DNA of 63,668 nt, filler included, from Klebsormidium nitens (Eukaryota > Plantae > Klebsormidiophyceae): NCBI GenBank assembly GCA_000708835.1. It is 5 parts of 5 records of this genome, joined end to end, with 100 filler letters (N's around TTAATTAATTAA, not from the genome) between each part and the next. Parts side by side here need not be neighbours in the genome. Positions count along the whole stretch, not along the records: positions 1 to 23,287 come from DF237878.1; 4 more parts are not named here. One strand, given 5' to 3'. Positions within the stretch are counted from its first letter, which is position 1. Every line of letters begins with the position of its first letter. A model generated the notes under the pieces. The model searched no databases. It worked only from the letters and a program-made list of their open reading frames with translations, and had not been told where the DNA came from. Both the position numbers and the translations under genes were made by a program. This document shows positions 5,304-19,900 of the stretch, piece by piece.

Positions 5304-5753
5304 ATGTTCACGTCCTGCTTGACAGAATTTGATAGACACTATGCATATGCCGATGGCCCGCGCGAAGACATTCGCCGAAAATCAGCTTTCTGCATACTCA
5401 GCGCATGCCTCCCATGCGTGTATATCGAGCACATTTGTCGCTACTTCCGGAGTGCGCGTCGAGCAAAGCGAGAGGCCAAAAACGTAGAGCTCCGGCATAA
5501 GGTTCACGAATTTGCAAAATCACACCCTGAAATCAACTTTTGGGACGACCTGTACCGCAAGTATCTCGCAGAGGTATCTGGCATCTCTTCCGAAACGTTC
5601 TTCATCATCGTACACGACATACAAGGGAGGTTTAACCGACATAATTCGACACGTTGGCGATCTATCCGATTTGGGGGTCTTCTCTTGTTGGCTTATGAAG
5701 GTCGAAAGGGCTTTCATCATTTTCACAAACATTGGCATCACTTATCCCTCTAG
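5304..5753 (+). CDS. Hypothetical protein (intronless, first ORF of virus-like island)
   Basis: Open frame 5196-5753; first true ATG at 5304. Stop overlaps the convergent HNH-like ORF by 4 nt, typical of dense viral packing. Confidence 0.5.
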   Translation: MFTSCLTEFDRHYAYADGPREDIRRKSAFCILSACLPCVYIEHICRYFRSARRAKREAKNVELRHKVHEFAKSHPEINFWDDLYRKYLAEVSGISSETFFIIVHDIQGRFNRHNSTRWRSIRFGGLLLLAYEGRKGFHHFHKHWHHLSL

Positions 5754-6346
5754 CCTTTCTGACAATCGTCGTGCATTGACATAGGTTCTCCGCATGATTG
5801 CCGCGCGAGCTCCTTTCTAAGCTTGTCTTCTAATACCGTAGGGCTGAGGTCTTCAGATAAACCTCTCTCTACGGATTGTATAGTTTCTATCATCATCTTC
5901 TCGTATTCAAACAACTCTACGAAATAACCTTTTCCGCGGTTGCAGAAATTGCACACCCAGGAAAGATTGTCGGCATAGGTATTTACAGCTACATCTAAAC
6001 GATCAATCTCAGGGAAAGCACCGCGGCCCCACAACCGTCTGTTCCATTCCAATGGATTGTTGCAGATATAGCATCTGCCCTTTTGCTCGGTCCACTTGGC
6101 CACAGCTGACGACTTGTCTAGTGGAACGGTATCCACATCCACATAACGCTCTCGCTGTCGCATATCGCTATTGCGTGCTGTCACACTCTGACGAATGAGT
6201 TCCTCGTAGTGATACGCAGGAAAGAATCTCATGTGGTGATTTCTCACCCTCGTGCGCTTCCCACGGATTCCGTCGATCACCCCACTCACTTTCTCCAATG
6301 ATACCAGATCGTTATGGTCTGGAAGGGTGTTCTCCAAATGATCCAA
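5750..6346 (-). CDS. HNH-like (beta-beta-alpha-Me) Zn-binding endonuclease
   Basis: Motif string CYIC...PEIDRLD...YADNLSWVCNFCNRGKG matches the CxxC / IDR / N..CxxCN..K pattern of phage and giant-virus HNH-like nucleases. Confidence 0.7.
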   Translation of the reverse strand: MDHLENTLPDHNDLVSLEKVSGVIDGIRGKRTRVRNHHMRFFPAYHYEELIRQSVTARNSDMRQRERYVDVDTVPLDKSSAVAKWTEQKGRCYICNNPLEWNRRLWGRGAFPEIDRLDVAVNTYADNLSWVCNFCNRGKGYFVELFEYEKMMIETIQSVERGLSEDLSPTVLEDKLRKELARQSCGEPMSMHDDCQKG

Positions 6347-8327: not shown

Positions 8328-10058
8328 ATGCATCAGCCGTCGTCGTGGAAGAAACCTGCCAACTGGCTGCAAACTCTATCAGTCCTGATAGCTTACTATA
8401 GTCTGGCACAACTCAGTAGGCTTCTCGTCCAAAAAGACACACACTCCGTCCCCGTTTGGGCTCCATCTGCGATCGGACTGGCAGCGGCCCTACGTTTTGG
8501 CCGTATACAAGCTGCAGGAGGTGTCTTCACGGGTTCCATATTGCATTTAACCGTCATGTTTTACACGTCCAAACGATATCGCCATCCTAAATTCCTCGCG
8601 ATCGCTCCTGTGATCGGCCTCATCAATGGCTTGGAAGCGACCATATCCTGTACATTAGTCCGCCTGCTGAGTGGACGCACTAAGAACTGGTTCGACACGA
8701 GAAATAGTGCATTCGCATTCTTCGCGGCGATGCCCATCGCCCCTCTGATATCGGGATACAGCATCGCTATCCTCTTGGTCGCAGTTCGCATCAGCAACGC
8801 GAAGCAAATAGGGCTCTATGGTGCGGCTCTATTCTTAGGACGTCTCGGTGCCACGTGCGCTTTAGTCCCGGCACTCACTCAACCTTGGACTGGAATGGAC
8901 AGACGTCGGATCGTCTCATTGAGTGCGGTCTACCTGGCTATCGTCATCGTATTCTCTTTCGTCTTTCTGAATAGATATGGGCTGGTCGAGAGCGAACAAC
9001 TCCGACCCCTCGTCTTTCCCGCATTCGGGCTCGTTCTCTTCGTCGCCTCTACCATCAAGGACATACGCGGCGTCACTGCAGCAATCTTGCTGGCAATGAG
9101 CTTGGTGATTGTAGGAAGTTCTAACGGAAAGGGTCCGTTCAGTGGCAGTGTTCACTCTCCTTTCTTTTGGCTCGTGCTGGAACAGAGCTTCATATGCGTC
9201 GTGAGCACTGCGAGTATATGCATGGCAGCTTTAGTCTGCGAACAGGATGCCACCAACTTTACGGTCGCGACTTTGAACAAGCAACTTCAGGCACATCTCC
9301 ACTACCGCACCCGTGAGTCCGCGTCTGCGATGGACCGCGCGGAGGACACTGGCCGCCACAAACTCAGTTTCATACGCCGCATAAAAGAAGAGGTGCGGGC
9401 ACCGCTAGCAGCCTTGAGCTTTTCAGGAGAGGGAAGTATTCCGAACGACCGGGAGAGCATCGAAGTTCTCGTCTCTAGATTAGACGATCTCATTGAAGTC
9501 GGAGTCGCTGAGACCGGACGGATGTCTATCGACGAGTACGAGTTCGACCCCATCGAGAATTTCCGCCTCGCTTTGAGTCAGTCACGACCGGACCTCATAA
9601 ATTGCGCAACCTGGAATACGACGGACGATGTTCCGAGGAAGGTGTATGGAGATGCGGTAAAACTCCGCCGCTGTCTCATGGAGATGATCATGGATACTTG
9701 TTTCAGGGCTGGAAAAGTGGACGCCTTGGACCTCAAGGTCAGAGTGGTCCCCTTGGAGGGCAGTTCATTCGGTTCCGATCATCCAAAACGTCAGATTCAA
9801 ATTCGATTTAAAGTCTACGCGGCAGCTCCTTCGAAAGCGGTCGATTGGAAGAGTGTCATTCCAGAAGAAGATACACTTTCAAACGATCGTCCACTAGCTC
9901 TTTGTGAGGAATTGGGAGGCAGCCTGTACCGCTCATTAGACGGACGAGGGACGAGACTCGACATGCGATTTCGACGTATGTTGTCAGACACGGCGGCTGA
10001 AGATCCTCGACACCTGCCGGCAATCACAGAAGGAGCGTTCAGCATAGAGAGTGCGTGA
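8328..10058 (+). CDS. MASE1 membrane sensor fused to degenerate HisKA/HATPase (pseudo-histidine kinase)
   Basis: N-half: multiple TM segments with MASE1-like PVWAPSAIGLAAAL, GLINGLEAT and GKGPF. C-half aligns with hybrid-HK consensus (LNKQLQ..RTRE, KLSFIRRIKEEVRAPL, ETGRMSIDEYEFD, VPRKVYGDAVKLRRCL, EELGGSL..DGRGT) but H-box His, N-box Asn and G1/G2 boxes are lost. Confidence 0.8.
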   Translation: MHQPSSWKKPANWLQTLSVLIAYYSLAQLSRLLVQKDTHSVPVWAPSAIGLAAALRFGRIQAAGGVFTGSILHLTVMFYTSKRYRHPKFLAIAPVIGLINGLEATISCTLVRLLSGRTKNWFDTRNSAFAFFAAMPIAPLISGYSIAILLVAVRISNAKQIGLYGAALFLGRLGATCALVPALTQPWTGMDRRRIVSLSAVYLAIVIVFSFVFLNRYGLVESEQLRPLVFPAFGLVLFVASTIKDIRGVTAAILLAMSLVIVGSSNGKGPFSGSVHSPFFWLVLEQSFICVVSTASICMAALVCEQDATNFTVATLNKQLQAHLHYRTRESASAMDRAEDTGRHKLSFIRRIKEEVRAPLAALSFSGEGSIPNDRESIEVLVSRLDDLIEVGVAETGRMSIDEYEFDPIENFRLALSQSRPDLINCATWNTTDDVPRKVYGDAVKLRRCLMEMIMDTCFRAGKVDALDLKVRVVPLEGSSFGSDHPKRQIQIRFKVYAAAPSKAVDWKSVIPEEDTLSNDRPLALCEELGGSLYRSLDGRGTRLDMRFRRMLSDTAAEDPRHLPAITEGAFSIESA

Positions 10059-10106: not shown

Positions 10107-10844
10107 TTGCAGGAGAGAGACATGGAACTCGCATGCACGGACTCTGAGTGGGCACGGATAATGATCGTTTTCCTCAACATTCAGTGCTCGTTGAAAGACT
10201 TGCTACCGCAGATCTTTCCCGATATGTGTTCCGAGCGGATTGCTCTGATCGATACCGTCTTATTGTCGTGGAGACTAGAAGACGCAGAGCAGCACCTTAT
10301 ATGGAAGCAAAAAGCCAGAGAATGCACTAGATACATCAATTTGTTGAACTCGTTGGGCTGGATCTCACCGTTGATCCAGCTCGCTCTTCAGGTAGTTTCG
10401 ATGTGCCCTGAAAGCTCCATGACACCGTGGATAAAACGTACCCTGACTGGCAGATTCAGTGCATGCCGTACATCAGCAGCCTCTTTATTGCTTCGGATCA
10501 CCAAGCGACTCTCCAACATCCTGTGTGGGCTGTACGTCTCAGCTCAATCTACGGCTCTCCGAAAGAATGCAGCGAGACAACGAATACTAGCAAACGGCTA
10601 TTGCCCGTTTACTGCTCCTTCTCTGCGACTTTCAGCTAAAATCGAAAGAGAAGCCATCGCAGCCCTCACGCGACTAAGAGAAGCTTTCGTAGATGAGGAT
10701 TATGGGAGGAAAGTAGGATATTGCGAAAATGGTGAACAGATTCAGTGCTTCATAGATATTCTAAATATGTCTAGTGTCTGGCTTCGAGAAGTTTGGGAGC
10801 ATTGTGCCCTCATATCGGGTGAGTTTACGGTCCACCCATCTTGA
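10107..10844 (+). CDS. Hypothetical protein
   Basis: 245-aa intronless open frame starting 49 nt after the MASE1 gene; true start uncertain (TTG at 10107, ATG at 10121). Confidence 0.5.
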   Translation: MQERDMELACTDSEWARIMIVFLNIQCSLKDLLPQIFPDMCSERIALIDTVLLSWRLEDAEQHLIWKQKARECTRYINLLNSLGWISPLIQLALQVVSMCPESSMTPWIKRTLTGRFSACRTSAASLLLRITKRLSNILCGLYVSAQSTALRKNAARQRILANGYCPFTAPSLRLSAKIEREAIAALTRLREAFVDEDYGRKVGYCENGEQIQCFIDILNMSSVWLREVWEHCALISGEFTVHPS

Positions 10845-11110
10845 ACGTCATGGAAAGTTAACCAACCGGGGAAGTTCGACGAATATGTGTGGTATCCGCG
10901 GACGGTTTCGAAATCGAAGCCTGAAAAATTGGGGAAATTTCCATAAACCGAGCAAAGTGAACAATGTGTGGTTCATGGCAGTAGGCAGTTCTCAACGGAA
11001 GCACTTGAGTCGATATAGGCAGAACGATTGACTAGGAAGTTAGCGATAAGCGCACGCATGGACGCCCACCAGTTTATTCAGCAACACGACAAGGTCACGA
11101 GCAGTGGAAT

Positions 11111-11467
11111 CTACAGCTTCACAATCGTGAAGAGCGCACAGATGAGCTCAGGCTGTAAAGACGAATTGAGGACGCTAGGATTTGCACTAGTCGAGCACTC
11201 TGGCATATGTGAGATCAGAAAGCTCTCACGTCCGATGCATGCACCCATGCCCATTTGCACCCAGAACTTGCCATCCAGCCCTTTCTTCCTCGTTCCAATG
11301 GTAAAGTCGAGTGCACTGCGAGCGGGCCCCTTCCTGCCTGGCTTAGCTTTGGGCTTGGGCTTTGCCTTCGTCTTAGCCCCGGCCTTCGTCTTGGTCTTTC
11401 GGTCTTTCACTGTCATCCTGCCATAAGTCGTTTCGGCATGTGACTTAGTGATCGACGGGGACCACAC
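11111..11467 (-). CDS. Lys-rich basic protein with RKGP..SA..F.IGT.KKG.DG..W motif (giant-virus-type)
   Basis: KTKTKAGAKTKAKPKPKAK tail followed by RKGPARSALDFTIGTRKKGLDGKFWV, a motif I recognise from uncharacterised nucleocytovirus proteins. Confidence 0.55.
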   Translation of the reverse strand: MWSPSITKSHAETTYGRMTVKDRKTKTKAGAKTKAKPKPKAKPGRKGPARSALDFTIGTRKKGLDGKFWVQMGMGACIGRESFLISHMPECSTSANPSVLNSSLQPELICALFTIVKL

Positions 11468-11488
11468 TCGAACACATACGGTGTGGCG

Positions 11489-11881
11489 TTATGTCGAAGA
11501 TAGGAGGGCCGCTGGAACCTTTTTGGCCTGGTCTACCATTCTGACGAAGAAATACAGGCAGAGACCTTGTATGAAGAAATTGAGAGCTATCTGCGCAAAC
11601 GGTCCCCAGTTCACGACCAACGCTTTATCTTTCTTCGCTTCCTCGAACGAGTCGTATGGCGCATTGGGGCCGTTCTTTATAGTATAGAACGAATTATCTA
11701 AGGTGTGAGTGGATACCAAGGACAAGAATGGTCCGATGATGTCTTCGACGAAACTAGTGACGATCTTGCCGAACAGCCCACCTAGTACCGTACCTACGGC
11801 GAGATCCAACATGTTGCCACGGCTGATGAAATTCATGAAATGACAGCACTCGCCCTTGACCGCTCCGCCGATCGAAGCCAT
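11489..11881 (-). CDS. mscL: Large-conductance mechanosensitive channel
   Basis: Canonical N-terminal/TM1 signature FMNFISRGNMLDLAVGTVLGGLFGKIVTSFVEDIIGP and TM2 region NWGPFAQIALNFFIQGLCLYFFVRMV; 130 aa. Confidence 0.92.
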   Translation of the reverse strand: MASIGGAVKGECCHFMNFISRGNMLDLAVGTVLGGLFGKIVTSFVEDIIGPFLSLVSTHTLDNSFYTIKNGPNAPYDSFEEAKKDKALVVNWGPFAQIALNFFIQGLCLYFFVRMVDQAKKVPAALLSST

Positions 11882-11912
11882 TCAGTGACATAGAAGTCAT
11901 CGAGAAAACTTT

Positions 11913-12138
11913 CCGAATCTCGATCTCGCGATCAAAGAGCTGCTGATTAGACCATGTACCACACATAATCCTATGTGTTTTCAGACAATTTACATCCTGC
12001 AAATGTACACGGTCATTATGGGACCGATGGATCAATCACTGAACAGACCGCGACATCGTTACAATCATCCAGTGGTCTGACAGGCTAAGCATGACATATC
12101 TGCCATGGCCCCATCTTGCAGTCGTCCCGAGGGACGAA
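11913..12138 (-). ncRNA. Predicted omegaRNA/fRNA scaffold of the Fanzor2 element
   Basis: Non-coding ~225 nt directly 3' of the Fanzor stop with stems at 12122-12137 (7 bp), 12044-12049/12074-12079, 12011-12025, 11991-12007 and 11961-11978 (7 bp). Ends in TTCGG. Position matches established TnpB/Fanzor architecture; the 3' boundary is inferred. Confidence 0.65.
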
Positions 12139-13983
12139 TCATCGTCTACGAATCGCACGTAGTAAGATGTTCCGAGCACCATTGCAGTCCCGATCTACGA
12201 CTGCGGAGCAGCTTCCGCATCTGAAAGTCCTCGCGGCTCCCAAACCTTCATTCACTTCCCCGCATCTGCCACATGTCTTGCTCGTGTAGTGGTCGGAGAC
12301 GATCAAAACTCTCACTCCTCGGTCAGCGGCTTTGGCTATCAGCCGCTGCTTAAACTTGTAGTGCGACAGAAAGGACATCTGCCTGACGGTCTTGCTCCCG
12401 ATGCGACGTCGGATTTTTTGAACCATCTCGCTGGTCTCGAATGACGGTAAGAGTATAACCTTGGCCTTTCGAGTCAGGAACTCTGCGACCTTATAATGCA
12501 TCTCGTCACGCAAGTTAGCGATCTTCCTCCGGACCTTGATGATTCTCAGTCGCACCGATCGTCGCTTCCTGCGGTGTTCCTTCGGGATGCGCTTTTCGAA
12601 GGCCAGGAGTCGATCTAAAGTGATGGCTAATGAGAAGAGACGCTTGGCGCACCCATCGCCCAACTTGTATGCCTCGCTGGGGCTATACGCTGTCTGGAAC
12701 GTCCTCACCGCCGGATCGAGGGCGATCACGGCCTCCTTGGTTTCGTTGATAAGGGACTTGCTTTCGCTCCTCACTTTCATAGGGCGAGCTTTCCGATAGG
12801 GGATGAGGAGGTAGTATCTGGCACCATCGAACTGTAGCCGACAGTCCTTCGTAATCTCACCGATTGCACCCAGCGTCTCGAACTCCCAAGGACAATAGTC
12901 TCCGTAGATGATCAAGGTGCGCTTGCCTCTACTCTTGATAGCGGTCTTTGCTACACCAACACACCATTCTTTAGAATCTTCCTCCTTTCTCGACTTGAAG
13001 GCGAGCTCGAAATGAGCGATGTTTCCGCGTGCGAGACTAGTGAAGCAGGCTTTTGCATTGTTGGCCGCTTCGAAGACTGCAGCGGCCCTCACGTCCTTGG
13101 GTGTATTCAAGAGGTGTGGTTTGTCTCCGTTCACCTCAGCCGGAGTAATGAGGTCCCGAAGGTACATCTTATTGAAGCTCGCTGTCTCGTTCATGAGAAA
13201 CACCGCCTTATTGTAGCTGTATCGAGCTGAGTGCCTCCAGTCGTTCAGGATTCTCTTCTGATACTTCTTTGGGAGGATCCGAACCTTCCTCATCCTGATT
13301 AGCTTCTCCTGGTCCTTCTCCACCTCCTCTTCGTCGCTCTCCTGGTCGTCCTCGTCCTTTTTCGGCACAGCTCGTATCTCTTCCGTATCGTCTTCCGTTC
13401 CATCGACAGCCGAACACCTGAACGACCGCGAGCACGTCCTCCGCCAGCTCTGCTTCTGGAGACTTATCGTCTTGTTTGAGAACCACGAGTTGGACACCGT
13501 GTCTCTCGAAGAACCATAAGAGAAGATCGAATCCGAAACGACACAATCTGTCTTTTGAGGCAACCACAATCTCTCGTACAAGTCCTCTCTCGCTCTGTTC
13601 CAAAAGGGATAAAAGTCCCTTCCTCTTGAAGCTGAGGCCTGATCCGATGTCGCAAACAACTGAGTGTCTGGGATATTGGTCACGCAGATGCGCCTCTTGA
13701 CGTCGAAGGTCATTCTTCTGCTTATGACTGGAAACTCGGACGTAGACGTAGGAGGCACGCTCACCGGATGGATCGAGACTCTTGAGGTCGTAGATCCGCT
13801 TTCCTCCGGGACTTCGCTCGACCTTAATCTTTCCAGCGGCCTCCCATCTGATGAGGGTCCTGGTGCAGACACCGAAGTGACTGGCGGCCTCAGACAGTCT
13901 GACATATCCCATCCGACTCGACCTTGGCATACCCCTATAGAAAAGGGTGTGGGATTTGACCGCACTTGTCTGCGTTTGTTCAT
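12139..13983 (-). CDS. tnpB: Fanzor2/TnpB RNA-guided nuclease (IS607-associated)
   Basis: RuvC-I VIALDPAVRTF, rearranged RuvC-II ILLPSF, Zn finger TCGRC...CGSC, RuvC-III DRDCNGARNI, plus N-terminal PFWN..LWLP.KTDC..SWFS segment typical of IS607-linked viral/eukaryotic Fanzor2. Frame is open for 614 codons; in-frame ATGs at 13983, 13905 and 13713. Confidence 0.95.
   Translation of the reverse strand: MNKRRQVRSNPTPFSIGVCQGRVGWDMSDCLRPPVTSVSAPGPSSDGRPLERLRSSEVPEESGSTTSRVSIHPVSVPPTSTSEFPVISRRMTFDVKRRICVTNIPDTQLFATSDQASASRGRDFYPFWNRAREDLYERLWLPQKTDCVVSDSIFSYGSSRDTVSNSWFSNKTISLQKQSWRRTCSRSFRCSAVDGTEDDTEEIRAVPKKDEDDQESDEEEVEKDQEKLIRMRKVRILPKKYQKRILNDWRHSARYSYNKAVFLMNETASFNKMYLRDLITPAEVNGDKPHLLNTPKDVRAAAVFEAANNAKACFTSLARGNIAHFELAFKSRKEEDSKEWCVGVAKTAIKSRGKRTLIIYGDYCPWEFETLGAIGEITKDCRLQFDGARYYLLIPYRKARPMKVRSESKSLINETKEAVIALDPAVRTFQTAYSPSEAYKLGDGCAKRLFSLAITLDRLLAFEKRIPKEHRRKRRSVRLRIIKVRRKIANLRDEMHYKVAEFLTRKAKVILLPSFETSEMVQKIRRRIGSKTVRQMSFLSHYKFKQRLIAKAADRGVRVLIVSDHYTSKTCGRCGEVNEGLGAARTFRCGSCSAVVDRDCNGARNILLRAIRRR
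13208..13912 (-). CDS. tnpA: IS607-family serine recombinase/transposase
   Basis: N-terminal wHTH (YVRLSEAASHFGVCTRTLIRWE), catalytic YVRVSSHKQ..DL.RQ, DIGSGL..KRKGL, SKDRLCRFGF, ELAEDVLAV. Likely ATG 13912 (alternative 13930). Confidence 0.95.
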   Translation of the reverse strand: MGYVRLSEAASHFGVCTRTLIRWEAAGKIKVERSPGGKRIYDLKSLDPSGERASYVYVRVSSHKQKNDLRRQEAHLRDQYPRHSVVCDIGSGLSFKRKGLLSLLEQSERGLVREIVVASKDRLCRFGFDLLLWFFERHGVQLVVLKQDDKSPEAELAEDVLAVVQVFGCRWNGRRYGRDTSCAEKGRGRPGERRRGGGEGPGEANQDEEGSDPPKEVSEENPERLEALSSIQLQ

Positions 13984-13987
13984 TCAA

Positions 13988-14539
13988 TCACGAAGCAGTT
14001 ATTGGGACCTTCCGTCGTAACCCTTCATAATGTAGTAGCTGAGGATCGAAAGCTATATGTATGATACGGTACTTTCCAGAGGCAGCTTTTCTTTCCAAAA
14101 ACTTTCGACAATCGATCGAGACCGAACCACCCGTGACGTCGCTCCTGTGAACTACGATCACCGCACCTAACAAACCACTGAGAGCTAACAGCTCCGTGTG
14201 ACCGCCGAATGTTTTGCGATGCCGCATGTACTTTGCATACGATATGGGTCCTCGGACCGACTTGGCTGCGTCTTCTCCCTCGGCAGATTTGTACTCTAGT
14301 TCGACCAAGTCCCTCCCCGTCGGATTCCCTCGGACGCCTCCCAAAGACGACCGCCAAAACCTCAACACATAACCGATCGCCGCATCTCTCAACCGTCCCG
14401 ACACTCTCTTCAATTCGTCTGGTGTCACGTCTCTACCAGCGAGGGTGGCCGCAATCGCATGAAACATGCAGGATCCGTCCGCGGGCACCTCCACGCATCG
14501 GAAGTTGCTCCGCTTTTCCATGACCCCTTTGATATACAC
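13988..14539 (-). CDS. OTU-family cysteine protease / deubiquitinase
   Basis: VEVPADGSCMFHAIA (catalytic D..C box), FGGHTELLALS.LL, and terminal HYEGL (catalytic His). Confidence 0.88.
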   Translation of the reverse strand: MYIKGVMEKRSNFRCVEVPADGSCMFHAIAATLAGRDVTPDELKRVSGRLRDAAIGYVLRFWRSSLGGVRGNPTGRDLVELEYKSAEGEDAAKSVRGPISYAKYMRHRKTFGGHTELLALSGLLGAVIVVHRSDVTGGSVSIDCRKFLERKAASGKYRIIHIAFDPQLLHYEGLRRKVPITAS

Positions 14540-14623
14540 CAGTCAAACGGTTATCGAGCTTCTGTGCGCGTTTCGTGCGGTTCCAATCGGTCCCTGCTTT
14601 CGAGGGTCTATCCTAGGGGTTAC

Positions 14624-14923
14624 ATGTCGGGCATTCCGAAAGAATGTCGAACGATGTTGCTGGTTCTGGTTCCCTACACATATGCGGTCTTGGGATTTCT
14701 CACGTACCACACACTTTGGTATGGAGCCGATCACCTATATCAAACCACCTGCACACGCGGTTACTGGAGATCTTTGCTAGTTGCTTCGAGCGGTCCGTGT
14801 ACCGCACTCAAACGGTTCGGTGATGCTTCCCTCGCTGCATCGACTGGGACGGCCTTAGCATTGGGCAGCATGGCCACAGTAGCGGTTCTGCGTAACGTCG
14901 GAGATGTAATAGTCGCTACTTAG
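14624..14923 (+). CDS. Small membrane protein resembling a nucleocytovirus ORF family
   Basis: Hydrophobic segments flanking HLYQTTCTRGYWRSLLVASSGPCTAL (Y..C...G......SP.C..L pattern recalled from giant-virus ORFs); ATG at 14624. Confidence 0.45.
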   Translation: MSGIPKECRTMLLVLVPYTYAVLGFLTYHTLWYGADHLYQTTCTRGYWRSLLVASSGPCTALKRFGDASLAASTGTALALGSMATVAVLRNVGDVIVAT

Positions 14924-14931
14924 GACAATAT

Positions 14932-15312
14932 GTGCAAATGGATGAGCATACCATGGGAGACACCGCGTGCTACACATGTAGCCCCTCTACACCGCGTGCT
15001 CTGGCCTATATCATCGCCGATGGCCTTCTCGGGAGGCTCCACTTCGACCTCAAGCAGAGGACATACCTTATATACACGACATTCATGCACGTGAGGAGCC
15101 CGACGGATCTTCCCCCGCAGATCTTGGCGGATGCCCTTCGAGAGATCGAGAGGATGGTCACGGAGTTTTCCTAGGAGGTTTCCTTTGAGGTGCTTTACAA
15201 CAAAGGGCTATGGAATTCTCACCAACACTGCCACTGGAAAATCAGGATAGACGAGAGGAAGTTCCGGAAGCTCAAGCGCGACCATCTGAAAGCATCTTGT
15301 CTTTTTCAGTGA
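14932..15312 (+). pseudogene. Hypothetical gene interrupted by an in-frame TAG
   Basis: 80-aa ORF ends at TAG 15172-15174, but the same frame continues 45 sense codons (EVSFEVLYNKGLWNSHQHCHWKIRIDERKF...) to TGA 15310-15312. Confidence 0.45.
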
Positions 15313-15789: not shown

Positions 15790-16549
15790 GCTGATGATGC
15801 TTCAAGTATATGTTCCTCCCTCCACTGATGTCCCGGTCCATCTTCACCCGGCACCAACCGCACTCGAATACTTTCCTCCCTCCGATTGTCTCATGGATCC
15901 AACCACAATTCGTGCATGTCCCTTACGGCTCATCCAACACCATCAGATTGACCCCTCGCTCCTTGCACTTCATCGCCAACTGGGCCCTGGAAGTATAGTG
16001 CGACCAGATGGACATCTTCCTACTCGTGTCTCTCCCGATCCTCCCGGCGTGTACCACGTATATTCCGAGTGCACATCCTCGTCGTTCCGAATGGGGGCAA
16101 GATTAGGCTCCCGAAAGTATCCGTGAGTATCCGGCACTGGAAGATCGTGCCGTCTTCCAGTGAACTTTCGACACCAGATTTCGGACCCTATCATGCACCC
16201 TCAGCTCCGCTTTCTGCATCCGCCTGGCATAGGCCCTGCTCCGTGGCGGGCAGTCGGGTGATCTCGGAATGAATCCGATCCGCAGTGTCCTCGAGACGTA
16301 TCAAGCGTTGGATGCACCCTGGTGCTATTCGGATGGCCACTCCTAGGGTCGGACTGTATCCTGTCAGGAAGGTGCGTACAATCGAGAGTGACTATCGCGT
16401 CCCCTTGGTTCTCGAGGACGGTCACATCCTTCTCGACCGGAGCGTGAATGTGGAAAGTGACCGAGTTTGTTCATGACGAGCCTAGCATCGAGTTGGACCT
16501 TCCCCGATGCGTTCAGCAACTCGTTTCGATACCATGAAGAGGGCGTCAT
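15790..16549 (-). pseudogene. tnpB: Second, degraded Fanzor2/TnpB (C-terminal half)
   Basis: Manual frame-hopping gives DARLVMNKLG..., IVTLD[PG deleted]VRTFLTGYSP, RRMQKAELRVHDRVRNLVSKVHWKTA, ILPPFGTTRM, RIGRDTSRKMSIWSHY...VLDEP*GTCTNCG...FECGWC..MDRDISGGRNIYLKH. All RuvC and ZnF landmarks are collinear with the intact copy. Confidence 0.88.
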
Positions 16550-16921: not shown

Positions 16922-19900
16922 CTAGAATCCTGAGAGGCTCTGGAAGTCGAATAAGCCTTCCTTGACGACCGGCGAATCTTCGACGACTGAGGCACGCTCG
17001 TCGCAGTCGAGCAGCGGATCATCCGCAAGCGGGTCCTGCTGGCAGAATGGAATATCGTATAAGGGTATTTCCATTGCCCGTATATTCTCACTAACGCCTG
17101 ACTTCAACTTCAGCCGACCCGTTGTCTAACGGCAACCTGACAGCCTCTTTCAAGCAAAGTGAGCCGCAATTGATGGAATCAGAAGCTTGGAGGACTACGA
17201 TTTGCTATGAGCTCTTACAGGCGGGTGGGCAGAGAAGGAGTCCCAATTCCACTCGTCCTGGTCAATTCGGGTAGGTTCGGGGAAGGCAAGTGTGGCGAGG
17301 GGACCGGGAACGTCCATTTCGCTCACATTGTAATTTACCGTCTGCAAAAGAGAGAAGGTTCTGAGGCCGAGTCAGGTCTCATTCTTTTCGAGATGGGCAT
17401 TGTGAGATGAATGCTGAAAGACAACTTGCTAGAGGCATCCGATACTACTGCCCCTGCTTGCCGACAAGGCTCCGAGCATCAGAAGCTTGAAGGACCAAAA
17501 TGCGCTATTATGCGCTCTTACCGGCGCGTGGGCAGAGAAGGAGTCCCAGTTCCACTCGTCCTGGTCAATTCGGGTAGGTTCGGGGAAGGCAAGTGTGGCA
17601 AGGGGAACGGGAACGTCCACTTCGCTCATATTGTAATTCACCGTCTGCAAAGAAGAGAAGGTTCTGAGGCCGAGTCGGGTCCTCATTCTTTTCGAGATGG
17701 GCAATATGAGATGAATGCTAAAAGACAACTTGCTAGAGGCNNNNNNNNNNNNNNNNNNNNNNNNNNNNNNNNNNNNNNNNNNNNNNNNNNNNNNNNNNNN
17801 NNNNNNNNNNNNNNNNNNNNNNNNNNNNNNNNNNNNNNNNNNNNNNNNNNNNNNNNNNNNNNNNNNNNNNNNNNNNNNNNNNNNNNNNNNNNNNTNTATC
17901 NCCNANAGNAAGGTCCTCTACCGTCCCCGTAGGTTGGGTCCCTTCCGTCGTCCCTTTCCCGAACGATGGCTAATTGTGAGATAGAATGCTAAAAGACAAC
18001 TTGCTAGAGGCATCCGATACTCCTGCCCCTGCTTGCCGACAAGGCTCCGAGCATGAGAAGCTTGATGGACCAAAATGCGCTATTATGCGCTCTTACCGGC
18101 GCGTGGGCAGAGAATGAGCCCAGTAGAGTCCGGTTTTCCGGGTAAGTCTGGGTGGAAATTTCCACCCTTGAAATGGGCTCAAGCGCTTCAAGGTCGGCCA
18201 TGGGAATGCCGGTTTCACTGACGTTCAAGTCCACCATCTGCACAAGAACAAAGTGGTGTCTGAGACCCTGCGCAAAATTAAGCAACCAAAGAGAACTCTA
18301 GTGGGCAATGATAGAAGAAATTGAGGACTCCGACTCTTTGAGGTGCCAGAGTAGGCCTTGCTCTTCTTAGCTGGGCATGAGTACCCTGAATTCAACCGGA
18401 AAAACCTGCTAAACACATTCTTGAAACAGATTGCCGTACTTCCTTATTTGCCTTCTCCTTTAGTGTATTAGACGAAGGATACTCATAATAGAATTATTGG
18501 TAGATTACAATAAAGAAAGACAGCAGCTCACACTGTTTGAAGCGTTTACGGCCATGTTGGCTGGGGCGCTGCTGGAACTGTCGTCAAGCTGGGGGAGAGC
18601 GTCTGGGTCGTTCGCCATGTGTGAGAAAATAGCATTGAGGCGAGCTCGGGTGCCCAAGTTGCACTCCACAGTGCGATGTGTCCGCAAGTGGTCAATCAGG
18701 CGATCCCAGGTAAACTTGCGAAGCTCGGAGTCTTCAGCATACCAGTCAAAGAAGACGTCCAATTTGGACATCATCAGGCTGCGCTTAAGGTTCTGTCCAC
18801 GCTTTGCCCCAAAGTCCGACCAGTACAGCTGCAAAAATGAGCACCAATCAGACATGGGGTGGCAAGACGGTAAGGGGGGATTGTATCAGATCATTGATTG
18901 AATTCTGGTTGCAAAGTCAGTTGAGAATCATCTTATCGCATGAATAAAAATTTGTCTGCGATAAAAATTGGAGATCTTGTCTGGCTTTAGAGTGCTAGTG
19001 TAGTGCCCCTTGAGACACTGTGTGCCTGGAAGCATTCTGACCACCATCCTGTACGAAGAAGCTTGTTGAAGCTGCTGAACAGCAGGGTAAAACATGTAGG
19101 AACAAACAGAAGTTTCAGTGCCCAGAATAACATGAGAAAGGCGCTGTACTGATAAATTGGTAAATTTTGGTGTGCGTATAAGAATATGGGCTGTATGCTG
19201 CAGAAGTCGGCTGCATAGCACTTTCTGACCAGTGTCTGATGAAAAGCAAAATATGTTATTCCTACATGCCTGTATCCAGCTCGCAAAAACCTACCTGCTC
19301 CAATCCCTTGTCTTTGGCATACTTGTTGTACGCCTCAAACATTCCCACGAGAATGATCTCCACTGACTTGTTGTTGCTAACTTTCTTTGTGAAGATTGCA
19401 GAGGCTGGCAATCTCTTTCCCTGGCTGTCGGTCACCTTGAAGTCTCTGCAGCGAATACAGCGGGGCAGCCATGTCTTGCTGTTGGCGCAACCCGAGTTTG
19501 AATCGAACTTGCGCAAACCATAGCCAAGTTTAGGCTGACTCCTGAACATTGCCAAAGTCCCACTTCTGATCAAAGGGATACTTTGTGCCCAAACTTTCAG
19601 CAGTACATGCTCGCAAACACAATTCGGAACATACAAATGCTGCAATCAGGAGAGGATTCAGTAGACAAACCCTTCGCTTGTTGCCTTGGTGATGTCGTCT
19701 GCCAAGGCCGATGCGTAGAACTCCAGAATATGCGCTTGCTCCCCAAACAATGAATGAAAAAACTGCAACAGAAGAACGCTTAGCTGCACTACGGATACTT
19801 CCTGGGCATCCGCCATGTTGTCGTCCGCCATTGGGACACTTGAACTTCGCGGCATCGTTCAGCCAGCTCGATGTAGACCAACTGTCCAGCAGCCCGCCGA

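What the first reader, a model, noticed from the sequence alone, without database searches (positions are those of the whole stretch)
11913..14022. Apparently complete autonomous IS607-Fanzor2 element
TnpA has all serine-recombinase motifs, the Fanzor2 frame is uninterrupted with RuvC-I/III Asp and a four-Cys zinc finger, and a structured 3' ncRNA follows. The class is known (IS607-linked Fanzor2 in giant viruses and some eukaryotes; from memory a Klebsormidium Fanzor has been tested, so this may be the same or a related family). A full element with both flanks is still a ready candidate programmable nuclease.
Basis: partly seen in the sequence, partly recalled or inferred. Interest (0 to 1): 0.8.

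Follow-up and report, generated by a model that had tools for sequence, protein, structure and literature searches.

The report
IS607-Fanzor2 transposon with nested genes
This is a structurally complete IS607-type transposon of a green alga's giant-virus-like DNA that carries a Fanzor2 RNA-guided nuclease, and its nuclease gene turns out to run right across the transposase gene in a second reading frame, an arrangement shared with hundreds of viral and bacterial relatives that I did not find described.

Summary
On the minus strand of this 23,287-bp Klebsormidium nitens scaffold lies a roughly 1.98-kb IS607-family element (about 14007-12024). It has an intact MerR-HTH serine-recombinase tnpA, an uninterrupted Fanzor2/TnpB-type ORF, GG at both junctions, and a roughly 150-nt 3' RNA scaffold conserved in eight loci.

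Three corrections:
- **Nested genes.** The Fanzor frame does not start after tnpA. It is open across the whole of tnpA in the +1 frame (588 codons from an ATG 7 nt after the tnpA ATG). That stretch encodes a disordered N-terminal extension with a conserved FW-LW-SWF module. The same nesting occurs in 55 of 56 giant-virus loci and 24 of 29 bacterial loci. Stop-codon depletion, suppressed synonymous change in tnpA, and TnpA-less Fanzor2 genes that keep the module all show it is selected.
- **Catalytic residue.** This copy alone has Asp where 179 of 179 relatives have the essential alternative RuvC-II Glu. It is therefore not the best nuclease candidate; the two K. nitens paralogues keep Glu.
- **Published enzyme.** The published KnFNuc is described as a Fanzor1 with a TTA TAM, so it is probably another family.

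No RNA contig covers the locus in four runs laid. The neighbourhood is giant-virus-like.

The parts
14008..14009 (-). GG dinucleotide at the left junction, the probable crossover site. The left flank reads AAGG, which is the predicted TAM-side sequence.
   Evidence: A GG sits at the same aligned column about 21 nt upstream of the conserved TTGAATGAAC block in 7 of 8 loci. IS607 recombines at GG at both ends (PMC10711439, PMC6188088).
12024..14007 (-). The IS607-Fanzor2 element, counting the right-end GG: about 1,984 bp.
   Evidence: blastn homology to seven related loci stops at 12022-12024 on the right and starts at 13987-14001 on the left.
13913..14007 (-). Left end (LE). A semi-conserved first 20 nt is followed by the conserved block TTGAATGAAC..CGCAGACAAGTGCG from 13987.
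   Evidence: The reading frame of this block differs between loci, so it is conserved as DNA, not as coding sequence.
13208..13912 (-). tnpA: serine recombinase of 234 aa, with an N-terminal MerR-type HTH and a C-terminal resolvase catalytic domain.
   Evidence: Pfam. It is intact in the window and in L001, L002, L003, L005 and L006.
12139..13905 (-). Long Fanzor2 ORF: 588 aa plus stop, from an ATG 7 nt after the tnpA ATG, in the +1 frame relative to tnpA. tnpA lies wholly inside it.
   Evidence: There are no stops over 175 tnpA codons, where synonymous shuffles expect 2.7-4.2 (P of zero stops 0.002-0.03 per locus). The same layout occurs in 55 of 56 viral and 24 of 29 bacterial loci.
13480..13605 (-). 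FW-LW-SWF module (residues 101-142 of the long form), encoded over the tnpA catalytic-domain codons.
   Evidence: W102, W114 and W141 are invariant in 33 long forms of 30-35% identity. The module profile finds 1,321 cluster representatives. tnpA third-position divergence falls two- to three-fold here.
12139..13293 (-). Fanzor2/TnpB core (384 aa from the internal Met): WED, REC, RuvC and zinc finger.
   Evidence: It aligns full-length to 9b0l (ApmFz2), E 2.2e-26. AlphaFold pLDDT is 80-95 over residues 203-588 of the long form. The top Foldseek hit is 9b0l.
12715..12717 (-). RuvC-I Asp (D193 of the core, D397 of the long form).
   Evidence: It aligns to D324 of ApmFNuc and is invariant in A5 and A6.
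12292..12294 (-). Alternative RuvC-II position: Asp (GAC) here, where relatives have Glu.
   Evidence: It aligns to E467 of ApmFNuc. Glu is found in 23 of 23, in 179 of 179 proteins, and in 90 of 92 locus translations.
12208..12273 (-). Four-Cys zinc finger (CxxC...CxxC).
   Evidence: Pfam TNB domain. C341, C344, C359 and C362 are conserved.
12187..12189 (-). RuvC-III Asp, in the motif DRDCNGARN.
   Evidence: Invariant column D369/D573.
12024..12174 (-). omegaRNA/fRNA scaffold together with the right end. It ends ...GATCCATCGG.
   Evidence: Nearly invariant in eight loci. Pair counts are 97% paired with three compensatory pairs. The covariance model matches once in the window. There is no Rfam family.
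12004..12023 (-). Right flank, the predicted guide-encoding sequence of this copy.
   Evidence: Sequence diverges between loci immediately after the terminal GG. The guide position is inferred from IS607 TnpB and ApmFNuc (PMC10711439, PMC10530073).
13988..14539 (-). Upstream neighbour: an OTU-like cysteine protease ORF. Its last six codons lie inside the left end if the GG boundary is correct.
   Evidence: Pfam OTU 4.3e-08; sequence.
11489..11881 (-). Downstream neighbour: an MscL-like channel ORF.
   Evidence: Pfam MscL 1.6e-23.

Best explanation
The locus is a structurally complete IS607-family insertion sequence of the Fanzor2 branch. It sits in giant-virus-like DNA of the Klebsormidium nitens assembly.

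**Shown**
- An intact MerR-HTH serine recombinase (TnpA).
- A Fanzor2-type RuvC/zinc-finger nuclease ORF.
- GG at both junctions.
- A conserved, partly covarying 3' RNA scaffold that ends at the right end.
- tnpA lies entirely inside the nuclease ORF in the -1 frame. The nuclease's first roughly 200 codons (a disordered extension with an FW-LW-SWF module) are overprinted on tnpA. This layout is under selection and is shared by giant-virus and bacterial IS607 relatives.

**Inferred by homology with IS607, ISXfa1 TnpB and ApmFNuc**
- TnpA excises the element as a circle and inserts it by crossover at GG.
- The 3' transcript is processed into a guide RNA whose guide is the right flank.
- The nuclease-RNA complex cuts element-free sites that carry a G-rich TAM (predicted RRGG) followed by the flank sequence. 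This favours copying the element back.
- One capped mRNA could give both proteins by leaky scanning, because the two ATGs are 7 nt apart.

**This particular copy** carries Asp in place of the essential alternative RuvC-II Glu, and no transcripts were seen. It is most likely a silent copy that is weakened or inactive as a nuclease, although both genes are open.
For: - **Identity of the two genes:** Pfam; PDB by sequence; fold.
- **Host and paralogues:** the annotated K. nitens protein P0003 is 100% identical and comes from a 23,287-bp contig. P0001 and P0015 are paralogues.
- **Ends:**
- **RNA:**
- **Nesting:**
  - +1 ORFs of 580-633 codons in 7 of 8 close loci.
  - Stop depletion.
  - The same codon at identical residues in 0.53-0.76 of tnpA positions against 0.41-0.60 of the core.
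  - tnpA third-position distance of 0.13-0.36 over the module, against 0.29-0.57 upstream and 0.39-0.61 in the core.
  - Invariant Trp residues.
  - 1,321 representative clusters carry the module, and 10 of 10 sampled are TnpB-type.
  - 55 of 56 viral loci and 24 of 29 bacterial loci share the layout.
  - The real +1 frames beat all 100 synonymous shuffles in 12 of 13 loci.
  - The module is kept in TnpA-less Fanzor2 genes of Naegleria and of a 150-kb contig.
- **Virus-like context:** EsV_1_7_cys, mRNA capping enzyme, PolB, DUF5764 and DUF5901 genes lie next to relatives. One window ORF is shared with such contigs.
- **Asp for Glu:**
- **Silence:**
Against: - No expression, protein or activity data exist for this locus.
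- The long isoform is inferred from comparative sequence only. The K. nitens copies also have an internal Met (13293) that could give a 384-aa form.
- Synonymous shuffles of tnpA still score 15-33 bits against the module profile. Part of the +1-frame similarity is therefore a by-product of TnpA conservation.
- The exact left boundary is ambiguous (14007 or 13987).
- AlphaFold gives no confident structure for the extension (pLDDT about 30), so its role is unknown.
- An Asp may still support some catalysis.
- RNA runs were available only as assembled contigs, and none was confirmed to be RNA.
Confidence: 0.8

Rival explanations
1. Only the short, 384-aa Fanzor (from Met 13293) is ever made. The open +1 frame over tnpA and its motif are side effects of TnpA protein conservation and codon usage.
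For: - An internal Met exists in the K. nitens copies.
- In the +1 frame, two of the three nucleotides of each codon are fixed by the TnpA residues.
- Synonymous shuffles keep 15-33 bits of module score.
- The extension is predicted to be disordered.
Against: - The internal Met is absent in many relatives.
- Stop depletion has P of 0.002-0.03 per locus.
- Synonymous sites of tnpA are two- to three-fold slower exactly over the module.
- Real scores exceed every shuffle in 12 of 13 loci.
- Fanzor2 genes with no tnpA beneath them keep the module.
- The three Trp residues are as invariant as the catalytic Asp residues.
Confidence: 0.12
2. The copy is fully active and autonomous: a ready programmable nuclease and a currently mobile element.
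For: Both ORFs are open, both ends and GG junctions are present, and the RNA scaffold is intact. Asp is chemically close to Glu.
Against: - It is the only Asp among 179 proteins and 92 locus translations at a residue whose Ala mutant is dead in ApmFNuc.
- No RNA contigs cover the locus.
- The copies differ by about 19% or more, so there is no sign of recent transposition.
Confidence: 0.15
3. The scaffold is not part of the algal nuclear genome. It would be DNA of a giant virus, or another organism, co-sequenced with the culture.
For: - It is a short scaffold with compact intron-less ORFs.
- Relatives sit in contigs with giant-virus hallmark genes.
- RNA-type runs of the species hold none of its words.
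- The annotated gene model is an artefactual chimera.
Against: - Several DNA runs of the species label hold it, but they are all of one sample.
- The scaffold also has an Arm-repeat ORF, tandem repeats and a decayed second Fanzor relic, which suits old integrated DNA.
- A paralogue lies on an 89-kb scaffold beside long kinase and SNF2 gene models.
Confidence: 0.25
4. It is the already characterised KnFNuc locus of Jiang et al. 2023.
For: It is the same species. KnFNuc is multi-copy and intron-less.
Against: - KnFNuc is described as a Fanzor1 with a TTA TAM.
- This protein is closest to Fanzor2 by sequence and fold, with SpuFz1 only at rank 47.
- It is linked to an IS607 tnpA.
- It has GG junctions, which predict a G-rich TAM.
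Confidence: 0.07

Closest known systems
Acanthamoeba polyphaga mimivirus IS607 element with ApmFNuc/ApmFz2 (L79; PDB 9b0l)
   Same: - IS607 TnpA plus a Fanzor2.
- Full-length core alignment (E 2e-26) and the best fold match.
- A rearranged RuvC site, with Pro or Gly at the canonical position and an alternative acidic residue near the zinc finger.
- A 3' guide RNA ending at the right end.
- A G-rich junction (GGG TAM in ApmFNuc).
   Different: - Only about 22% identity.
- The ApmFz2 N-terminal domain (RuvC-R and thumb) does not match the FW-LW-SWF module.
- The window copy has Asp at the E467 position.
- The RNA scaffold here is about 150 nt, against about 205 nt.
Bacterial IS607 TnpB clade related to Fanzor2 (e.g. 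ISXfa1; Yoon et al. 2023)
   Same: - GG crossover and a right-end guide RNA.
- A rearranged active site.
- 30-34% identity to cyanobacterial and Chloroflexota homologues.
- These homologues also carry the module and the tnpA-nested layout.
   Different: The host is a eukaryote or giant virus. The papers read on this clade do not describe the nested frame or the N-terminal module.
NlovFz2 (Naegleria lovaniensis) and other TnpA-less Fanzor2
   Same: The core is 35-36% identical. The N-terminal disordered extension has the FW...LW...WF motif.
   Different: There is no tnpA under the extension, the elements are non-autonomous, and the extension is shorter (96 aa was reported as 'disordered').
KnFNuc (Klebsormidium nitens Fanzor1, Jiang et al. 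2023)
   Same: Same species, intron-less and multi-copy.
   Different: It is reported as a Fanzor1 with a TTA TAM. The present family is IS607-linked Fanzor2.
Overprinted (overlapping) genes of viruses
   Same: A younger, disordered protein region is encoded in the +1 frame of an older enzyme gene, with suppressed synonymous change in the older gene.
   Different: Here the overlap covers a whole transposase gene inside a DNA transposon and is conserved from bacteria to giant viruses.

Membership tests
IS607-family insertion sequence | TnpA is a serine recombinase with an N-terminal MerR-like HTH and a C-terminal catalytic domain. | tested here: met
   Pfam MerR at residues 32-66 and Resolvase at 80-196. 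IS607-family TnpA structures 3ilx, 3lhf, 6dgc and 6dgb match at 1e-11 to 5e-26.
IS607-family insertion sequence | Catalytic Ser and the DRLxRFG motifs are intact. | tested here: met
   YVRVSS, DIGSGL and KDRLCRFG align to 3ilx. The ORF is unbroken at 234 aa.
IS607-family insertion sequence | No terminal inverted repeats, no target duplication, and a GG dinucleotide at both junctions. | tested here: met
   No terminal inverted repeat was found. The right end finishes in GG in 8 of 8 loci, and a GG sits at one aligned column at the left junction in 7 of 8. The left boundary is ambiguous by 20 nt.
IS607-family insertion sequence | tnpB-type gene on the same strand, 3' of tnpA. | tested here: met
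   The difference here is that the gene begins 7 nt after the tnpA start, in another frame.
IS607-family insertion sequence | TnpA-dependent excision and insertion. | not testable with these tools
   Copies differ by 19% or more. No empty site was found.
Fanzor2 | TnpB-like WED/REC/RuvC/zinc-finger core, closer to Fanzor2 and IS607 TnpB than to Fanzor1. | tested here: met
   9b0l is top by sequence and by fold. SpuFz1 ranks 47th.
Fanzor2 | Rearranged RuvC site: an inert residue at canonical RuvC-II and a conserved alternative Glu. | tested here: not met
   Pro at the canonical position is present and invariant. However, the alternative Glu is Asp in this copy, where relatives have Glu in 179 of 179. 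The family has the feature; this copy has lost it.
Fanzor2 | Conserved structured RNA spanning the 3' end of the gene and the right end, with the guide in the flank. | tested here: met
   Expression and binding are not shown.
Fanzor2 | Encoded in a eukaryote or a eukaryotic virus. | tested here: inconclusive
   The scaffold is from the K. nitens assembly and the neighbours of relatives are giant-virus-like. Integration in the nucleus is not shown.
Fanzor2 | RNA-guided, TAM-dependent DNA cleavage. | not testable with these tools
   The TAM is only predicted (RRGG) from the left flanks.
Fanzor1 (including the published KnFNuc) | Membership of the Fanzor1 clade, carried by eukaryotic transposons, with an A/T-rich TAM. 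| tested here: not met
   The element is IS607-linked, has GG junctions and has a Fanzor2 best match. The KnFNuc sequence itself was not available.

The most novel reading that the evidence does not exclude
In the IS607 branch that gave rise to Fanzor2, the nuclease is a roughly 560-600-aa protein whose first third is overprinted on the whole transposase gene in the +1 frame. That third carries a conserved FW-LW-SWF short-motif module of unknown function. The layout is ancestral, being present in cyanobacteria, Chloroflexota, giant viruses and this alga. The module is retained even after tnpA is lost. The nesting would couple the two genes physically and evolutionarily. In eukaryotic hosts it would let one capped mRNA yield both proteins from two ATGs a few nucleotides apart.
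Probability: 0.7. Interest if true: 0.75.

Novelty: new variant of a known kind. Interest (0 to 1): 0.62.

Why it matters
IS607-Fanzor2 elements are known, and several Fanzor2 enzymes have been used for editing, so another copy is ordinary in itself. The gene layout is what is not ordinary.

- **Wrong starts.** If the nuclease really begins next to the tnpA start, many annotated and tested TnpB/Fanzor2 constructs of this clade may lack a conserved N-terminal module, or may have been given the wrong start.
- **A built-in constraint.** The transposase and the nuclease cannot evolve or be lost independently without cost.
- **An origin for the 'disordered extension'.** The N-terminal extension reported for Fanzor2 enzymes has a traceable origin. 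The module is a defined target for mutagenesis, covering RNA processing, partner binding, localisation and regulation of TnpA against the nuclease.
- **Practical choice of enzyme.** The window copy is the wrong one to express, because it has Asp at the essential Glu. The paralogues on K. nitens scaffolds DF237727 and DF237338 keep all catalytic residues.

Tried and rejected
- **Single-protein scan of viral contigs:** no relative found. The alignment-based scan later worked.
- **Exact DNA pattern from the RNA scaffold:** no match in viral or metagenome contigs.
- **Rfam:** no family matches.
- **Covariance model of the RNA:** it found only its own training loci. There is no second copy in the window and nothing in the distant loci L009 and L010.
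- **Supplement of Jiang et al.:** not held, so KnFNuc could not be compared.
- **RNA evidence:** 18 RNA-type runs of the species label hold next to none of the words. Four of them, laid on 10800-15200, gave no contig. This is weak negative evidence only.
- **N-terminal module against PDB and Pfam:** nothing found, including the ApmFz2 N-terminal domain.
- **One hmmsearch step in a script returned no rows:** it was replaced by a motif scan and later by profile searches.
- **Idea that the left junction had mutated to GA, which would block excision:** rejected. A conserved GG lies 21 nt further upstream in 7 of 8 loci.
- **Idea that the nesting is a eukaryotic adaptation:** rejected. The bacterial relatives have it too.
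- **Glu in the FET motif as a canonical RuvC-II residue:** rejected. The canonical position aligns to the invariant Pro, and the FET position varies (E, R, D, K, Q).
Full report
**What is there**

The piece is a whole 23,287-bp scaffold of the Klebsormidium nitens assembly GCA_000708835.1. The annotated protein P0003 is 100% identical over the shared part and comes from a contig of exactly that length.

That gene model is a chimera. It joins pieces of four separate intron-less ORFs through spurious introns: an OTU protease, tnpA, the Fanzor and an MscL channel (Pfam).

Everything that matters lies on the minus strand (sequence).

**The two proteins**

- **TnpA.** The gene runs 13912-13208 and encodes a 234-aa protein with a MerR-type HTH followed by a resolvase catalytic domain. 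This is the inverted domain order typical of IS607 transposases. Its best solved relatives are the catalytic domains of ISC1904, ISC1926 and IS1535 TnpA, with E down to 4.9e-26 and the RVSS, DIGSGL and DRLxRFG motifs aligned.
- **Nuclease core.** It runs 13293-12139 (384 aa) and aligns end to end with mimivirus Fanzor2 (9b0l, E 2.2e-26). It aligns more weakly with Cas12f and TnpB structures.
- **Fold.** An AlphaFold model built on 33 homologues is confident over the core (pLDDT 80-95). Its best fold match is again 9b0l, followed by IS607 and ISDra2 TnpB. Spizellomyces Fanzor1 ranks only 47th.

The protein is therefore a Fanzor2-type enzyme, not a Fanzor1.

**Ends and RNA**

Related loci were fetched from K. 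nitens (L001 and L002), from ENA assemblies (L003 and L004) and from JGI metagenomes (L005-L008).

- **Right end.** Homology to all of these loci stops within 2 nt of 12024, after the invariant ...GATCCATCGG.
- **Left end.** Continuous conservation starts at 13987. A GG also sits at the same aligned column about 21 nt further upstream in 7 of 8 loci (window 14009-14008), followed by a semi-conserved A[AG]C[TA]G[CT]T.
- **Favoured boundary.** IS607 elements recombine at GG dinucleotides at both ends. I therefore place the left boundary after that GG. The element is then about 1,984 bp.
  - The OTU ORF would run six codons into it.
  - The left flanks read AAGG, AGGG or TAGG, so the predicted TAM is RRGG. 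This is in line with the GGG TAMs of ApmFNuc and ISXfa1 TnpB.
- **RNA scaffold.** The 115 nt between the stop codon and the right end are more conserved than the coding sequence, even in L002, whose protein is only 57% identical.
  - The consensus fold has four helices, 97% of pair cells are paired, and three pairs carry compensatory changes.
  - A covariance model finds exactly one copy in the window, and Rfam has no matching family.
  - Taken together this is what a Fanzor/TnpB guide-RNA scaffold looks like. Expression has not been shown.

**The nested reading frame**

The nuclease frame is open far upstream of the internal Met: 614 codons in the window.

*In the close relatives*

- It is equally open in 7 of the 8 close loci (580-633 codons).
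- These ORFs start at a conserved ATG 7 nt after the tnpA ATG (ATGGGnTATGTC reads MGYV in one frame and M-S in the other).
- Several relatives have no internal Met at all.
- tnpA is therefore wholly contained in the nuclease ORF, which reads in the +1 frame relative to it.

*Why this is not an accident*

1. Synonymous-codon shuffles of tnpA expect 2.7-4.2 stops in that frame. The probability of none is 0.002-0.03 per locus, and the +2 frame has 2-9 stops.
2. At identical TnpA residues the same codon is used more often than in the non-overlapped core, in every comparison (0.53-0.76 against 0.41-0.60).
3. tnpA third-position divergence falls to 0.13-0.36 over codons 91-175. It is 0.29-0.57 over codons 1-90 and 0.39-0.61 in the core.
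4. The slow stretch encodes, in the +1 frame, a module of the form PFW-x9-LWLP-x-KTD...SWF. Its three Trp residues are invariant in 33 long forms of only 30-35% identity, which is as invariant as the catalytic Asp residues.
5. Locus L009, whose TnpA is only 40-49% identical, uses the same synonymous codons (ATT GTG GTT ... AAA GAC ... TTG TGT) and so keeps the sequence KLWLPTKTGCV.
6. Fanzor2 genes with no tnpA beneath them keep the module. These are Naegleria lovaniensis (L010) and a 150-kb virus-like contig (L011).

*A necessary caution*

Two of the three nucleotides of each +1 codon are fixed by the TnpA residues. Shuffled tnpA genes still score 15-33 bits against the module profile. The real sequences nevertheless exceed all 100 shuffles in 12 of 13 loci.

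*How widespread it is*

- The module profile finds 1,321 cluster representatives at E <= 1e-3 among 1.84 billion. Most are proteins of 550-680 aa with the module near residue 100, and ten of ten sampled are TnpB-type.
- In IMG/VR giant-virus contigs, 55 of 56 loci with a same-strand tnpA have a +1 ORF of 466-641 codons across it. The +2 ORFs at the same place are 4-99 codons.
  - One such contig has the length I recall for chlorovirus AR158. This is from memory.
- Among bacterial and archaeal genomes, 24 of 29 loci with an adjacent tnpA show the same +1 overlap of 100-630 nt. They are mostly cyanobacteria and Chloroflexota. All 15 sampled carry the module.
- The layout is therefore ancestral to this IS607 branch, not a eukaryotic invention.

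*Structure and literature*

- AlphaFold predicts the first 202 residues as disordered, apart from a weak helix between the FW and LW motifs.
- Neither PDB nor Pfam knows the module.
- The papers read describe 'disordered N-terminal' regions or a mimivirus-specific N-terminal domain, but not the overlap with tnpA.
- No paper in the library combines overprinting or overlapping-gene terms with TnpB, Fanzor or IS607.

**State of this copy**

- RuvC-I Asp, RuvC-III Asp and the four Cys are present.
- The canonical RuvC-II position is the invariant Pro, as in Fanzors.
- The alternative Glu corresponds to E467 of ApmFNuc, whose Ala mutant is inactive. Here it is Asp, at 12294-12292.
- It is Glu in 23 of 23 aligned relatives, in 179 of 179 homologous proteins, and in 90 of 92 locus translations. 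The two exceptions are canonical TnpBs with Pro.
- The K. nitens paralogues in L001 and L002 keep Glu and have an intact tnpA and long ORF.
- The closest copies are only about 81% identical in DNA, so there is no sign of recent transposition.
- Runs of the species label that are probably RNA hold next to none of the element's words. Four of them gave no contig over 10800-15200, flanking genes included. These are assembled contigs whose RNA status is a guess, so this is weak evidence of silence.

**Context**

- Relatives sit beside giant-virus genes: EsV_1_7_cys, dCMP deaminase, mRNA capping enzyme, PolB, DUF5764 and DUF5901.
- The window shares one anonymous ORF with such contigs, and it holds a second, badly decayed Fanzor2 relic at about 15790-16400.
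- It also has an Arm-repeat ORF, a MASE1-domain ORF, tandem repeats and an assembly gap.
- I read this as giant-virus-derived DNA, probably endogenous. Co-sequenced viral DNA is not excluded.

**Known or new**

The class is known: Bao and Jurka 2013, Saito 2023, Jiang 2023 and Yoon 2023. The K. nitens enzyme tested by Jiang et al. (KnFNuc) is described as a Fanzor1 with a TTA TAM and five copies. The present family is Fanzor2-like, IS607-linked and GG-flanked. It is therefore probably different, but I could not compare sequences because the supplement is not held.

**Verdict**

This is a real and structurally complete IS607-Fanzor2 element, and as a copy it is ordinary. It probably has a weakened nuclease. 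Its anatomy exposes a conserved nesting of tnpA inside the nuclease gene that I did not find described.

Noticed in passing
window 15790-16400 (-): A second Fanzor2/TnpB-like gene, broken into short pieces in different frames. Fragments include ...MKMDRDISGGRNIYLK and ...WSHYTSRAQLAMKCKERGVNLMVLDEP. They are 40-57% identical to the C-terminal part of several Fanzor2 proteins. It is a decayed relic of another subfamily, and the covariance model finds no matching RNA scaffold.
   Followed up: partly
window 11489-14539 (-): The public K. nitens gene model (P0003, 554 aa) is a chimera. It splices together parts of the OTU ORF, tnpA, the Fanzor and the MscL ORF. P0001 and P0015 likewise join the tnpA and Fanzor frames through false introns.
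   Followed up: yes
window 13988-14007 and 12004-12023: The first bases after the left GG (TCCCAATAAC) resemble the right flank (TCCCATAATGAC). L006 shows a similar likeness, but the other six loci do not. This could be chance or a target preference of TnpA. If the GG boundary is right, the rebuilt empty site would end the OTU ORF two codons after the junction.
   Followed up: partly
window 8328-10058 (+): A 576-aa single ORF with a MASE1 sensor domain, a mostly bacterial membrane sensor domain (Pfam 1.5e-11), in an algal or virus-like scaffold.
   Followed up: no
window 5750-6346 (-): An anonymous 198-aa ORF with no Pfam match. It is shared (about 34% identity over 130 aa) with the virus-like contigs L004 (8638-9027) and L005 (16783-17100).
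   Followed up: no
window 17200-18120: Tandemly repeated units, each opening with the same ORF start (MLKDNLLEASDT...). They are interrupted by a run of N, which is an assembly gap.
   Followed up: no
L113:2446-4185: In one Dehalococcoidia locus the tnpA match and the tnpB core lie in the same 580-codon frame. This could be a natural TnpA-TnpB fusion or a frameshifted copy.
   Followed up: no
L009:4001-4300: In this distant relative, the part of the nuclease ORF overprinted on tnpA carries several basic clusters that look like nuclear localisation signals (GTKRRRLEP, SRKRKAS, TTKKKT). The window copy has no such clear cluster.
   Followed up: no
L066, L071-L073, L078, L080, L081 (chlorovirus-sized contigs): Several Fanzor2 copies in contigs of 330-369 kb match only from residue about 200 of the long form. 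They are short forms without the extension, in the same genomes that also hold a long, tnpA-nested copy (L026).
   Followed up: no
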